Source: Octopus sinensis (taxonomy: Eukaryota). From it: DNA of 64,000 nt. A program made the translations under genes and the position numbers. The stretch is from positions 17,112,001-17,176,000 of the forward strand of contig NC_043009.1 in assembly GCF_006345805.1 (NCBI RefSeq), written 5' to 3'. The notes under the pieces are model-generated. The model was given only the letters and a program-made list of their open reading frames with translations. It did not search any database and had not been told where the DNA came from. Numbering within the stretch: position 1 is the first letter of the stretch; each line of letters starts with the position of its first letter. Of this stretch, positions 13,456 to 50,148 are shown piece after piece.

Positions 13456-13578
13456 CTATGCAAGAATGTCCCTTTGGGTGAAGACTGTAGCCATCATTAC
13501 ATTTACAAAAGTAACTGCCTAATGTATTGACACACTTATGGTCACATTTACCGTTCTTCTTTTCACATTCATCAATAT
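13456..13578 (-). CDS. Exon 11: calcium-binding EGF
   Basis: ttttag|AT ATT GAT..ATA G|gtaagt; [41 protein letters not shown]; 123 nt. Confidence 0.93.
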
Positions 13579-49500: not shown

Positions 49501-50148
49501 ATTTATGTGCAACGCATTAGTTATACTTCTACAATATATAAACAATTTTAACATTTTTATGCAGTTCCTAATATTTAATTATAAAAATATGATAAAGGAT
49601 TTAAAAAAAGAAAAAAACTATGAAGGTCCACTGAAGTAAAATAGGAATCAAAGGAGTCCATACGTAAAAAAATGGTGGAGAAGCATTGGTTTAGGTCAAG
49701 TGGGGCTTGCTCTCTAGGTAATGTATTTAAGTCAAGCCAGGCTTGATCTCCATGCAGTGTGTCAAGATCAAGTCTACAACAATGAACAATATCACCTCCA
49801 GCTTTACATATTTACAACTATAAGAACTAAACTATAGATTTATGTGTGTTTGGGATAAATGCAGTTCAACAACGATGCAGAGACTCAGACTATTAAATGC
49901 AAAGCTAGAAAGGCGGCATTCTATGACAACACATTTTGACGACTTTAGAAATACCACATCCTTAACATCAGAATAAAACATTTTCAAAGGAGTTAGTTAT
50001 GACTGAATAACTAGTAACTTACCAACACATTCTGAACTACTGTTGCTTTTGAGTTGGAAGCCACTATAACAATAACAGTATGGCTCGTCTTGACTAAGTT
50101 TACAGTACTGGGAGCAGTTTAGACCGATTTGCAAACATGGATGGATAT
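13456..50148 (-). CDS. Multi-exon gene fragment encoding a periodic cbEGF-cbEGF-Sushi extracellular protein (11 exons, 1566 nt, ~522 aa; 5' and 3' ends not found)
   Basis: Exons 50023-50148, 48944-49069, 46347-46469, 43588-43782, 42846-42968, 39029-39151, 36673-36867, 36398-36520, 27007-27126, 16543-16731 and 13456-13578. All are AG/GT bounded, phase 1-1, and join into one open frame. Confidence 0.9.
14691..14760 (+). ncRNA. Second copy of the 2608-2681 hammerhead motif
   Basis: GATAA CTGAAGA (14703) GATG..CATC-C GAAA (14741) CTCGGAG TT TTACC; similarity to the first copy ends just past the predicted cleavage site. Confidence 0.6.
15040..15410 (+). mobile_element. SINE family A copy (head eroded)
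   Basis: CACATGGTTTCAGGTTCAGTCCCACTG...CAGTCAAATGACTGAAACAAGTAAAAG. Confidence 0.8.
15478..15685 (-). mobile_element. tRNA-derived SINE, family C
   Basis: Plus strand reads TTGGTTTCAAA.TTTGGCACAAGGCCAGC...GAATTTGAACTCAGAAC; B box GAGTTCAAATTC on the minus strand. Confidence 0.8.
16543..16731 (-). CDS. Exon 10: Sushi/CCP domain (6 Cys)
   Basis: aaacag|GA TAT TGT..ATA G|gtaagt; [63 protein letters not shown]; 189 nt. Confidence 0.93.
17990..18190 (-). mobile_element. Eroded 3' half of SINE family A
   Basis: AAATCAACCCCAGGACTTATT resembles the reverse complement of the family A 3' region. Confidence 0.55.
19441..19826 (-). mobile_element. tRNA-derived SINE, family B (GGAGGCGCAATGG head variant), near full length
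   Basis: Minus head GGAGGCGCAATGGCCCAGTGGTTAGGGCAGCGGACTC; 3' body shared with 738-1040 and 51080-51400. Confidence 0.85.
20637..20840 (+). mobile_element. SINE family C copy with (ATT)n tail
   Basis: GAGCTGGTAGAATTGTTAGCAC...GAGTTCAAATTCC...AAAATTTGAAACC followed by (ATT)n at 20841-20895. Confidence 0.8.
20896..23630 (-). mobile_element. R4/Dong-type LINE (RT, CCHC knuckle, restriction-like endonuclease), degraded, 3' end in (TAA)n
   Basis: [17 protein letters not shown]; [11 protein letters not shown]; [13 protein letters not shown]; [27 protein letters not shown]; [31 protein letters not shown]. Multiple stops and frameshifts. Confidence 0.9.
23883..25335 (-). mobile_element. Second, more diverged R4/Dong-type LINE 3' part, ending in (TAA)n at 23850-23882
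   Basis: Hand translation of the minus strand gives [22 protein letters not shown]; [31 protein letters not shown]; [18 protein letters not shown]; [12 protein letters not shown]; [18 protein letters not shown]. Confidence 0.75.
25340..25500. repeat. (TTA)n-(TTG)n-(CTG)n compound microsatellite
   Basis: Directly visible. Confidence 0.95.
25505..25712 (-). mobile_element. SINE family C copy
   Basis: TTTTCAAATTTTGGCACAAGGCCAGC...GAAAGAATGAAAGACAAAGTCAAC...GGAATTTGAATTCAGAATG. Confidence 0.8.
25789..26130 (+). mobile_element. SINE with family B head and body but a different, hairpin-rich 3' part
   Basis: 25789-25985 is colinear with the reverse complement of 19640-19826; 25986-26130 is unrelated to the usual family B 3' domain. 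Confidence 0.65.
26556..26990 (+). mobile_element. SINE family A copy, ending ~15 bp from the exon 9 donor site
   Basis: GCAGTGTGGTAAGTAGCTTGCTTACCAACCACATGG...GACTGAAACAAGTAAAAGAG. Confidence 0.85.
27007..27126 (-). CDS. Exon 9: calcium-binding EGF
   Basis: tttctag|AT ATC AAT..GTT G|gtaagt; [40 protein letters not shown]; 120 nt. Confidence 0.93.
27330..27960 (-). mobile_element. Decayed CR1/L2/Jockey-group LINE, RT C-terminal end
   Basis: [37 protein letters not shown] resembles the 'LY..LVRP.MEY.S.VW' thumb region. Confidence 0.6.
28348..28745 (-). mobile_element. Non-autonomous Helitron (398 bp)
   Basis: Minus strand: A|TCTTTATATATAAAAG... 5' end, subterminal hairpin CCCGAGCAACGCCGGG, 3' CTAG|T; inserted at an AT dinucleotide; internal ~70-100-bp direct duplication. 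Confidence 0.85.
29425..29630 (-). mobile_element. SINE family C copy
   Basis: CTCAACTGGTACTTATTT..TTTGAACTCAGAAC..TTCTGCCAGCTCACC. Confidence 0.75.
29648..29800. repeat. (TAA)n-(TGA)n microsatellite
   Basis: Directly visible. Confidence 0.95.
30819..30945 (-). mobile_element. SINE family C 3' fragment
   Basis: TGGTTTCAAATTTTGGCACAAGGCCAG...GGATGAAGGGCAAAGTTG. Confidence 0.7.
32665..33200. repeat. Long imperfect (TA)n microsatellite
   Basis: Directly visible. Confidence 0.95.
33200..33976 (-). mobile_element. Tc1/mariner superfamily element, maT-like (DD37D), internally deleted and frameshifted
   Basis: [68 protein letters not shown]. About 37 residues separate the QQD and LDY aspartates once the frameshift is corrected. 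Ends are TA-flanked (TACAGGGT / ACCCATGTA). Confidence 0.8.
34012..34550 (+). mobile_element. 5'-truncated RTE 3' UTR copy with a single unit of the large repeat
   Basis: Colinear with 8718-9630; starts and ends in (TA)n; (GAT)n tail. Confidence 0.9.
35060..35540 (-). mobile_element. Mariner transposase 3' remnant
   Basis: [30 protein letters not shown] corresponds to the mariner HPPYSPDLAPSDY.LF motif. Confidence 0.8.
36398..36520 (-). CDS. Exon 8: calcium-binding EGF
   Basis: gttctag|AT ATC AAT..TCA G|gtaagt; [41 protein letters not shown]; 123 nt. Confidence 0.93.
36673..36867 (-). CDS. Exon 7: Sushi/CCP domain (6 Cys)
   Basis: tcaatag|CT GAT GGA..AAA G|gtaagg; [64 protein letters not shown]; 195 nt. 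Confidence 0.93.
37706..38075. mobile_element. hAT (Charlie-like) MITE, 370 bp
   Basis: Termini CAGAGGTTCTCAA / TTAAGGATCACTG; exact 8-bp TSD ATCTAGAT at 37698-37705 and 38076-38083. Confidence 0.85.
38172..38376. mobile_element. piggyBac-type MITE, 205 bp
   Basis: TTAA|CCCTTTAAAATT ... AATGCTAAAGGG|TTAA. Confidence 0.8.
38790..38945 (+). mobile_element. Eroded SINE family C copy
   Basis: GAGTTCTAATCCC..GGTCAACTTTAACTTTCATCCTT..CTGGGGTCAAT. Confidence 0.6.
39029..39151 (-). CDS. Exon 6: calcium-binding EGF
   Basis: ttctgtag|AC ATG AAT..ACC T|gtaagt; [41 protein letters not shown]; 123 nt. Confidence 0.93.
39255..39370. repeat. (GATA)n/(GACA)n microsatellite
   Basis: Directly visible. Confidence 0.95.
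42270..42470 (+). mobile_element. Eroded RTE-type tail
   Basis: GCATTAGGAAGAGCATCCAG...GACATTAAATG(GAT)n. Confidence 0.65.
42846..42968 (-). CDS. Exon 5: calcium-binding EGF (mostly missed by the ORF track)
   Basis: atatctag|AC ATC AAT..TCT G|gtaagt; [41 protein letters not shown]; 123 nt. Confidence 0.93.
43588..43782 (-). CDS. Exon 4: Sushi/CCP domain (6 Cys)
   Basis: atatgcag|CA AGT GAT..AGA G|gtaagt; [64 protein letters not shown]; 195 nt. Confidence 0.92.
44284..45490 (+). mobile_element. Decayed mariner element, near full span
   Basis: Remnants [19 protein letters not shown] (TGDETW..YD.ETK.QS), [17 protein letters not shown] (LHHDNAPAH) and PFFPDLI..LFPKL (PYSPDL); weak TIRs CAAGATCTGTCCAGAAAG / TTTTTGGATAGAGCTC. 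Confidence 0.7.
46347..46469 (-). CDS. Exon 3: calcium-binding EGF
   Basis: ctccacag|AG ACC AAT..CTA C|gtgagt; [41 protein letters not shown]; 123 nt. Confidence 0.93.
47127..47340 (-). mobile_element. SINE family C copy
   Basis: TATTGGTTTCAAATTTTGGCACAAGGCCAG...GATTCTGCCAGCTCAC. Confidence 0.85.
48280..48480 (-). mobile_element. RTE-type 3' tail copy
   Basis: (CAT)n..CCGTGCTGGCATGGGTTGGACAG..GCTGCACCAGGCTCCAGTC. Confidence 0.75.
48944..49069 (-). CDS. Exon 2: calcium-binding-type EGF
   Basis: cattttag|AT ATT GAT..GAG G|gtaagc; [42 protein letters not shown]; 126 nt. Confidence 0.93.
49438..49688. mobile_element. hAT (Charlie-like) MITE, 251 bp
   Basis: Termini CAGCAGTTCTGAACC / GGTGGAGAAGCATTG; near-identical 8-bp TSD GTCTAGGT / GTTTAGGT. 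Confidence 0.7.
50023..50148 (-). CDS. Exon 1 (first seen): atypical EGF domain, absent from the ORF track
   Basis: ttgttttaacag|AT ATC CAT..GTT G|gtaagt; [42 protein letters not shown]; 126 nt; 6 Cys in EGF spacing. Confidence 0.88.

What the first reader, a model, noticed from the sequence alone, without database searches (positions are those of the whole stretch)
13456..50148. Unnamed extracellular protein with a strict (cbEGF-cbEGF-Sushi)n period
Seen in sequence: 11 exons join in frame as EGF-[cbEGF-cbEGF-Sushi]x3-cbEGF. Established knowledge: fibrillins and SCUBE run EGFs without Sushi, selectins run Sushi arrays after one EGF, and fibulin-7 and SUSD1 carry only one or two Sushi domains. 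I do not recognise any named family with this 2:1 period. Inference: a lineage-specific, module-duplicated matrix or adhesion protein whose ends lie outside the window or are unrecognised.
Basis: partly seen in the sequence, partly recalled or inferred. Interest (0 to 1): 0.72.

Follow-up and report, generated by a model that had tools for sequence, protein, structure and literature searches.

The report
Octopus EGF–Sushi mosaic matrix gene, middle part
The window holds twelve middle exons of a very large octopus gene for a secreted, calcium-stiffened rod-like protein made of EGF and Sushi modules; the gene is real and conserved among octopods, but it is an ordinary, already-predicted mosaic matrix gene and its 2:1 module rhythm is not strict.

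Summary
The exons are real and sit exactly at the given coordinates, on the minus strand. There are 12, not 11. The order is EGF, cbEGF-cbEGF-Sushi, cbEGF-cbEGF-Sushi, cbEGF-cbEGF-cbEGF-Sushi, cbEGF, so the 2:1 period breaks inside the window. Every module is one phase 1-1 exon with canonical splice sites.

Exons 5-12 are 97-100% identical, exon by exon, to Octopus vulgaris CAI9731634.1 (1864 aa, auto-named SVEP1; gene model about 397 kb). Exons 2-12 are 64% identical and gaplessly colinear with Argonauta hians GAB1601778.1 ('fibrillin-1-like, partial'). Argonauta genomic DNA also holds an exon 1 orthologue.

The inferred whole gene reads: cbEGF array, EGF, then cbEGF runs of 2, 2, 3, 2, 1, 1, 1 each followed by a Sushi, a further Sushi, HYR and a Cys-rich tail. 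No vWA, pentraxin, TB, CUB or lectin domain was found, so both database names are misnomers.

All Sushi modules are the six-cysteine selectin type. All eight were in place before Octopus and Argonauta diverged. Module trees give no support for recent 3-exon-unit duplication.

Verdict: an uncharacterised, apparently octopod-specific member of the SVEP1/selectin-like mosaic matrix proteins. It is real and low in surprise.

The parts
50023..50148 (-). Exon 1: non-calcium-binding EGF module ([15 protein letters not shown]...SSECV), phase 1-1
   Evidence: Splice sites and frame. 63% identical orthologous exon with the same phase in Argonauta DNA at L001:9184-9306. Absent from both annotated protein models.
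48944..49069 (-). Exon 2: cbEGF ([12 protein letters not shown]...; His at the usual aromatic position)
   Evidence: 66% identical to Argonauta P0159 residues 1-35. Complete orthologous exon at L001:9983-10102.
46347..46469 (-). Exon 3: cbEGF
   Evidence: 75% identical to Argonauta. Matches the EGF_CA and Asx-hydroxylation patterns.
43588..43782 (-). Exon 4: Sushi/CCP, six-Cys type (Sushi 1)
   Evidence: 66-69% identical to Argonauta Sushi 1. Six-Cys pattern. Omitted from the O. vulgaris model.
42846..42968 (-). Exon 5: cbEGF
   Evidence: 98% identical to P0155 residues 721-760.
39029..39151 (-). Exon 6: cbEGF
   Evidence: 98% identical to P0155 residues 762-801.
36673..36867 (-). Exon 7: Sushi/CCP, six-Cys type (Sushi 2)
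   Evidence: 100% identical to P0155 residues 803-866. Followed by the shortest intron, 152 nt.
36398..36520 (-). Exon 8: cbEGF (first of three in a row)
   Evidence: 98% identical to P0155 residues 868-907.
28183..28305 (-). Exon 9: cbEGF (DIDQC variant; second of three)
   Evidence: 100% identical to P0155 residues 909-948. 52% identical to Argonauta residues 331-370.
27007..27126 (-). Exon 10: cbEGF, one residue shorter (third of three)
   Evidence: 97% identical to P0155 residues 950-988. 62% identical to Argonauta.
16543..16731 (-). Exon 11: Sushi/CCP, six-Cys type (Sushi 3)
   Evidence: 100% identical to P0155 residues 990-1051. 69-70% identical to Argonauta Sushi 3.
13456..13578 (-). 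Exon 12: cbEGF; ends with a phase-1 donor, so the gene continues beyond window position 1
   Evidence: 100% identical to P0155 residues 1053-1092. The next P0155 exon (residues 1094-1132) is not in the window.

Best explanation
The window is an internal 37-kb slice (12 exons, minus strand) of a giant octopod gene. The species is Octopus vulgaris or a very close relative. The gene encodes a roughly 2,000-aa mosaic extracellular protein. Combining the window, the O. vulgaris model and Argonauta DNA gives this full layout: an N-terminal array of cbEGF modules with a few Cys-rich spacers; one plain EGF (exon 1); seven units of 1-3 cbEGFs followed by one six-Cys selectin-type Sushi (cbEGF counts 2,2,3,2,1,1,1); one more Sushi; a HYR domain; and a Cys-rich tail. 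Each module is one symmetrical phase 1-1 exon, the classic substrate of exon shuffling and in-frame exon skipping. Shown here: the exons, their domain identity, their conservation and the layout. Inferred from what is known of these module families: the protein is secreted, because every module type is extracellular and disulphide-bonded and no TM segment is seen. The cbEGFs bind Ca2+; 7 of 8 carry the D-x-[DN]-E-C / Asx-hydroxylation consensus. The invariant one-residue Sushi-to-cbEGF linker (C-x-D-I-[ND]-E-C) would make a Ca2+-stiffened rod, as in fibrillin cbEGF pairs. That rod would display Sushi protein-binding modules at spacings that shorten towards the C-terminus. The most likely role is matrix or cell-adhesion scaffolding or ligand presentation of the SVEP1/selectin kind. 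The specific ligand and tissue are unknown.
For: Exon definition and in-frame splicing. Pfam domains. No further modules in the window. Orthologues: O. vulgaris P0155/CAI9731634.1 is 97-100% identical per exon over exons 5-12, and Argonauta P0159/GAB1601778.1 is 64% identical over 513 gapless residues covering exons 2-12. Gene span 397 kb. Argonauta locus with the exon 1 orthologue and upstream cbEGF exons on the same strand. Full module order. HYR present, and no vWA, pentraxin, TB, CUB or lectin domain. Tail homologous at 23-28% identity to spider and tick E(n)-S-S-HYR proteins and to the Sushi-HYR region of true SVEP1. Six-Cys Sushi subtype whose next-best relatives are P-selectins. Ca-binding and hydroxylation consensus. 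Invariant junction. No TM-grade hydrophobic segment in either model (highest 19-residue Kyte-Doolittle mean 1.37). One-to-one orthology of all eight Sushi modules.
Against: No transcript evidence was available. The O. vulgaris model skips exons 1-4, and the Argonauta annotation splits the gene at exon 1/2, so the true mRNA structure is unverified. No signal peptide has been seen: the P0155 N-terminus is acidic and not hydrophobic, and no candidate signal-peptide exon lies within 13.8 kb upstream. Secretion, Ca2+ binding, rod shape and function all rest on module-family knowledge and were not tested. The species was not determined; there are 4 amino-acid differences from the O. vulgaris protein over exons 5-12.
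Confidence: 0.82

Rival explanations
1. It is the octopus orthologue of SVEP1/polydom, as the O. vulgaris record is named.
For: It has EGF, Sushi and HYR together. The C-terminal Sushi-HYR region aligns with the N-proximal Sushi-HYR region of salmonid and Lottia SVEP1.
Against: Pfam finds no vWA and no pentraxin in either octopod model. It has only 8 Sushi modules, all six-Cys, whereas SVEP1 representatives have about 30 four-Cys plus 3-4 six-Cys modules. The homologous cassette is C-terminal here and N-proximal in SVEP1, at only 23-27% identity. Molluscs have a separate full-size SVEP1 (Lottia, 3777 aa).
Confidence: 0.05
2. The O. vulgaris model is right and exons 1-4 are not part of the main product. 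They would be an alternative cassette, or exons of another transcript, so the 'EES' units in the window are fewer in the real protein.
For: P0155 joins other upstream cbEGF exons directly to exon 5. All exons are symmetrical in phase 1-1, so skipping stays in frame.
Against: Exons 1-4 are intact and have good splice sites. They are as conserved against Argonauta (63-75%) as exons 5-12 (52-69%). In Argonauta they lie in the same order directly upstream of exon 5, and exons 2-4 are included in its gene model. The P0155 5' end lacks a signal peptide and looks incomplete. Skipping could still be a genuine minor isoform.
Confidence: 0.15
3. It is a fibrillin/LTBP-family microfibril protein, as the Argonauta record is named.
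For: Long cbEGF arrays with fibrillin-like Ca2+-binding consensus. Many top sequence hits are named fibrillin or LTBP.
Against: No TB/8-Cys domain (PF00683) in the window product, P0155 or P0159. Fibrillins have no Sushi or HYR. Identity to those hits is at most 39% and reflects generic cbEGF similarity.
Confidence: 0.02
4. It is a decaying pseudogene or a chance array of Cys-rich ORFs.
For: None, beyond the TE-rich, AT-rich setting with huge introns.
Against: Twelve of twelve exons are open, with canonical splice sites and preserved Cys frameworks. They are near-identical to an annotated protein and 52-75% conserved in another octopod family.
Confidence: 0.01

Closest known systems
SVEP1 / polydom (Sushi, vWA, EGF, pentraxin protein)
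   Same: A secreted mosaic of cbEGF, Sushi and HYR modules with Cys-rich ephrin-receptor-like stretches. The octopod Sushi-HYR tail is detectably homologous (23-27% identity) to the SVEP1 Sushi-HYR region. SVEP1 also contains a few six-Cys Sushi modules.
   Different: No vWA and no pentraxin. There are 8 rather than about 34 Sushi modules, and they are interleaved singly with cbEGFs instead of forming a long tandem run. The cassette order is reversed, and the protein is about half the size.
Spider and tick proteins with a cbEGF array followed by Sushi-Sushi-HYR (auto-named 'SVEP1' in Trichonephila/Caerostris and 'SCUBE2 isoform X8' in Dermacentor), and gastropod cbEGF-array-Sushi-Sushi proteins (Aplysia 'fibrillin-2', Biomphalaria A0A2C9K971)
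   Same: An N-terminal cbEGF array followed by two six-Cys Sushi modules. In the arthropods, HYR and a Cys-rich tail follow, colinear with the octopod C-terminus over 240-380 aa.
   Different: Sushi modules occur only at the end of the EGF array and are never intercalated. Identity is low, and none of these proteins is characterised.
Selectins (P-/E-selectin)
   Same: An EGF followed by six-Cys CCP modules. By per-module score, the nearest Sushi relatives outside octopods are fish and frog P-selectins.
   Different: Selectins have a C-type lectin head, a single EGF, an uninterrupted CCP run and a TM anchor. None of these was found here.
Fibrillins, fibulins, SCUBE, matrilin-2 (cbEGF-array matrix proteins)
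   Same: cEGF-type calcium-binding EGF modules with the Asx-hydroxylation consensus. These are the top whole-sequence hits, at 28-39% identity.
   Different: Their defining partner domains (TB, fibulin C-terminal module, CUB, vWA) are absent, and they lack intercalated Sushi.

Membership tests
SVEP1 / polydom | N-terminal von Willebrand factor A domain | tested here: not met
   Pfam scan of P0155 and P0159 at E<=0.01 lists no VWA. Caveat: the 5' end of the gene is probably incomplete in both models.
SVEP1 / polydom | Pentraxin domain | tested here: not met
   No pentraxin hit in the window product, P0155 or P0159.
SVEP1 / polydom | HYR domain next to Sushi modules | tested here: met
   PF02494 at P0155 1662-1740 (E 5e-9) and P0159 1218-1296 (E 4e-10), outside the window.
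SVEP1 / polydom | Long tandem run of about 30 four-Cys Sushi modules | tested here: not met
   Eight Sushi modules by the module-HMM scan, all singly spaced. The pattern count finds only six-Cys-type matches and no four-Cys match in P0155 or P0159, whereas SVEP1 representatives show 27-35 four-Cys modules.
Fibrillin / LTBP | TB (8-Cys) domains interspersed in the cbEGF array | tested here: not met
   PF00683 absent from the window product and both orthologues.
Selectins | C-type lectin domain, single EGF, CCP run and TM anchor | tested here: not met
   No lectin domain. No hydrophobic segment of TM grade (highest 19-residue Kyte-Doolittle mean 1.37). Only the six-Cys CCP subtype is shared.
SCUBE | C-terminal CUB domain after the EGF array and Cys-rich repeats | tested here: not met
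   PF00431 absent from P0155 and P0159.
Calcium-binding EGF module (module level) | D/N-x-D/N-E/Q-C start, six-Cys framework, C-x-[DN]-x4-[FY]-x-C-x-C hydroxylation site | tested here: met
   Pfam EGF_CA in 8 stretches, E 4e-52. PROSITE-style patterns match 7 of 8 modules; exon 2 has His for Phe/Tyr, and exon 1 is a plain EGF.
Sushi / CCP module (module level) | About 60 aa with four framework Cys and a conserved Trp | tested here: met
   Pfam Sushi in 3 stretches, E 1e-16. Invariant C, G and W positions. An extra Cys pair as in selectin CCPs.

The most novel reading that the evidence does not exclude
The interleaving is an octopod innovation with a function of its own. Selectin-type Sushi modules would have been intercalated into an ancestral 'cbEGF array + Sushi-Sushi-HYR' protein. 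The result is a Ca2+-rigid rod that presents eight binding modules at graded spacings (cbEGF counts 2,2,3,2,1,1,1,0). This arrangement has been fixed since before Octopus and Argonauta split. It might be used by hemocytes or endothelium as a multivalent adhesion or pattern-recognition scaffold.
Probability: 0.1. Interest if true: 0.45.

Novelty: new member of a known kind. Interest (0 to 1): 0.22.

Why it matters
Mainly as an annotation correction. The gene is mis-named in two public genomes (SVEP1 in one, fibrillin-1-like in the other). The O. vulgaris model drops exons 1-4, and the Argonauta annotation splits the gene in two; this window together with the Argonauta locus shows the likely true structure. 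It is also a clean example of one-module-per-exon, phase 1-1 shuffling, giving a conserved interleaved cbEGF/Sushi rod in octopods. It does not open a long-standing question, and lineage-specific EGF/Sushi mosaics are common in invertebrate genomes.

Tried and rejected
I used a profile of the three Sushi exons instead. Giant multi-Sushi proteins swamped that ranking, and re-scoring per module was needed to find the two true relatives.

2. The search for homologous proteins with the spliced product gave only generic cbEGF proteins at 39% identity or less. With exons 1-4 alone it gave 2 irrelevant hits. With a Sushi+cbEGF di-module profile it gave only short EGF fragments. Hit lengths never exceeded about 1.75x the query length, so long orthologues could not appear in this tool.

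3. A scan for a signal-peptide exon (ATG, hydrophobic core, phase-1 donor) in the 13.8 kb upstream of exon 1 found nothing.

4. The PDB sequence search found only generic Sushi and cbEGF structures, with no Sushi-cbEGF interleaved unit.

5. Literature searches for EGF-Sushi architectures and cephalopods, and for the Argonauta eggcase proteome, gave no description of this protein. One paper reports 'svep1' expression in O. vulgaris hemocytes, but that label cannot be tied to this locus.

6. DNA for the O. vulgaris locus was not retrievable because the gene range is too long.

7. The species of the window could not be determined with these tools.
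Full report
**1. Observation**

A six-frame scan for Cys-rich open segments shows twelve of them, all on the minus strand, between 13451 and 50176. Reading the DNA gives each a polypyrimidine-AG acceptor and a G|GTAAG-type donor (GTGAG in two), and all are in phase 1-1. The exon coordinates are:

- Exon 1: 50023-50148
- Exon 2: 48944-49069
- Exon 3: 46347-46469
- Exon 4: 43588-43782
- Exon 5: 42846-42968
- Exon 6: 39029-39151
- Exon 7: 36673-36867
- Exon 8: 36398-36520
- Exon 9: 28183-28305
- Exon 10: 27007-27126
- Exon 11: 16543-16731
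- Exon 12: 13456-13578

All lengths are multiples of three, and the exons splice into a 562-aa open product.

Pfam finds FXa_inhibition/cEGF/EGF_CA in eight stretches and Sushi in three. Exon 1 is a plain six-Cys EGF without the calcium-binding start. Profiles built from the window's own modules find no other EGF or Sushi anywhere in the six-frame translation of the 64 kb; the next-best E-values are above 0.1.

The order is E-EES-EES-EEES-E, and the third unit has three cbEGFs.

**2. What it is**

A whole-product search returned only generic cbEGF-array proteins at 39% identity or less. Those with Sushi carried it as a terminal pair and never interleaved it. That tool never returned hits longer than about 1.75 times the query length, so long orthologues were invisible to it.

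The raw ranking is dominated by giant multi-Sushi proteins. Re-scoring per module singles out two proteins, with 60-70 bits per Sushi against about 20-30 for everything else:

- **P0159** is Argonauta hians GAB1601778.1, named 'fibrillin-1-like, partial', 1421 aa.

Window exons 5-12 match P0155 residues 721-1092 at 97-100% per exon, with four amino-acid differences in all. The window therefore comes from O. vulgaris or a very close relative. Exons 2-12 align with P0159 residues 1-513 without a single gap, at 64% identity. Exons 2-4 (66-75%) are as conserved as exons 5-12 (52-69%). The three-cbEGF third unit is present in both orthologues.

**3. The gene beyond the window**

The O. vulgaris gene model spans about 397 kb. 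No other exon of either protein lies in the window, so the neighbouring exons are more than 13 kb away on both sides.

The Argonauta locus was retrievable as L001, with the gene at 10001-41498 and Casc1 downstream. Scanning its DNA with the module profiles gives the following:

- An orthologue of exon 1 at 9184-9306, 63% identical and with the same phase.
- A complete exon 2 at 9983-10102.
- Three further cbEGF exons upstream on the same strand. Two of them match best the 10th-11th EGFs of P0155 (residues 460-542).

The Argonauta annotation has therefore split one gene at the exon 1/2 boundary. The O. vulgaris model has skipped exons 1-4. The combined layout is:

- a cbEGF array with short Cys-rich spacers;
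- one plain EGF;
- cbEGF runs of 2, 2, 3, 2, 1, 1 and 1, each followed by one Sushi;
- a further Sushi;
- HYR;
- a Cys-rich tail.

Neither model has a signal peptide or a TM-grade hydrophobic segment, and the 5' end is probably still missing. A search for a signal-peptide exon in the 13.8 kb upstream of exon 1 found none.

**4. Module evolution**

Within the window, cbEGF modules do not cluster by their position in the supposed 3-exon unit. The closest pair is exon 6 and exon 8 (65% aa, 75% nt), which occupy 'b' and 'a' positions of adjacent units. The three Sushi exons are only 38-40% identical.

With the full set, each of the eight Octopus Sushi modules pairs with its positional orthologue in Argonauta at 56-78%. 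Paralogues are 22-57% identical, and only Sushi 3, 4 and 5 form a looser group at 52-57%. The interleaved layout was therefore complete before the two lineages diverged. There is no sign of recent duplication in 3-exon units.

All Sushi modules are the six-Cys subtype. By per-module score the next-best relatives are fish and frog P-selectins and a clam 'P-selectin-like' protein. True SVEP1 representatives carry only 3-4 such modules among about 30 four-Cys ones. The arthropod and gastropod 'cbEGF array-Sushi-Sushi' proteins carry two.

**5. How it most likely works**

Shown:

- Seven of eight cbEGFs carry the calcium-binding and Asx-hydroxylation consensus.
- The Sushi-to-cbEGF junction is invariant across eleven units from the two genera, as C-x-D-I-[ND]-E-C, with a single linker residue.

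Inferred, from the established behaviour of fibrillin-type cbEGF pairs and of CCP modules:

- The protein is secreted and disulphide-rich.
- It forms a Ca2+-stiffened rod.
- It presents single Sushi modules as binding sites at spacings that shorten towards the C-terminus, ending in a SVEP1-like Sushi-HYR cassette.

A matrix or cell-adhesion scaffold role is the best guess. An O. vulgaris brain atlas reports a gene called svep1 in hemocytes (PMC9712504), but I could not tie that label to this locus. The symmetrical exon phases allow in-frame skipping, so the exon 1-4-less product could be a real isoform.

**6. Comparison with known families**

The C-terminal 349 aa aligns at 23-28% identity with two groups:

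- the C-termini of spider 'SVEP1' and tick 'SCUBE2' models, which have a cbEGF array followed by Sushi-Sushi-HYR;
- the N-proximal Sushi-HYR region of bona fide SVEP1 from salmonids and Lottia.

Pfam finds no vWA, pentraxin, TB, CUB or lectin domain. Membership of SVEP1, fibrillin/LTBP, SCUBE and the selectins therefore fails on defining features. The protein works like those matrix and adhesion mosaics without being a member of any of them. PDB holds no interleaved cbEGF/Sushi unit, and text searches found no description of such a protein.

**7. Verdict**

This is a real, conserved, apparently octopod-specific mosaic gene, present in databases only as mis-named predictions.

- The exon count, the strict period and the 3-exon-unit duplication do not.
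- Lineage-specific EGF/Sushi mosaics assembled from phase 1-1 exons are commonplace, so the interest is low. The practical value is a corrected gene structure.

Distribution outside octopods remains untested beyond the top 150 representatives.

Noticed in passing
window 5915-8696 (+): A run of frameshifted ORFs from a LINE-type retroelement. It lies 3' of exon 12, presumably in the next intron. Pfam gives Exo_endo_phos_2 (endonuclease-reverse transcriptase) at E 1e-5, below the curated cut-off.
   Followed up: partly
window 20134-23647 (-), inside intron 10: A second degraded retroelement, on the same strand as the gene. Pfam gives RVT_1 at E 4e-5 for 21994-22608.
   Followed up: partly
window 1455-1733, 8555-9809, 34040-34585 and 3570-3870, both strands: Copies and tandem arrays (63-bp and 174-bp periods) of one short interspersed repeat. 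Its translation recurs as '...GAFYVPPAQ...HGLDGSTG...'. It looks like an abundant SINE-like family.
   Followed up: no
window 1781-2031, 5834-6100, 32687-33201; also 25334-25492, 25730-25852, about 5100-5300: Very long (AT)n microsatellites of up to 258 copies, (TGC)n tracts that read as poly-Cys, and a purine-rich AGG/AGA tract. These inflate the number of Cys-rich ORFs in a naive scan.
   Followed up: no
window 33433-33879 (-), intron 8: A 149-aa ORF that reads like a DDE transposase fragment ('...[14 protein letters not shown]...'). Pfam found nothing at E<=0.01, so this is unconfirmed.
   Followed up: partly
window 36521-36672: Intron 7 (Sushi 2 to the next cbEGF) is only 152 nt, whereas all other introns are 0.6-10.3 kb. 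The Argonauta orthologous gene is about ten times more compact: 31.5 kb for 1421 aa, against about 397 kb for the O. vulgaris model.
   Followed up: no
L001 about 26160-30450; P0159 residues 766-914: The Argonauta model carries about 16 tandem copies of APPGTTVTL inside the sixth Sushi, where Octopus has only 'APDNNNNVTV'. It is either a lineage-specific mucin-like insertion or a retained repeat-containing intron in the gene model.
   Followed up: no
P0155 residues 239-292 and 539-596 (outside the window): The two gaps in the O. vulgaris N-terminal cbEGF array read like ephrin-receptor-like/GCC2_GCC3 Cys-rich repeats (C..C....Y......C..CP...). Pfam did not report them at E<=0.01.
   Followed up: no
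tool behaviour: the search for homologous proteins never returned a hit longer than about 1.75x the query length: 981 aa for a 562-aa query, 227 for 189 and 184 for 105. This hid the true 1421-aa and 1864-aa orthologues.
   Followed up: yes
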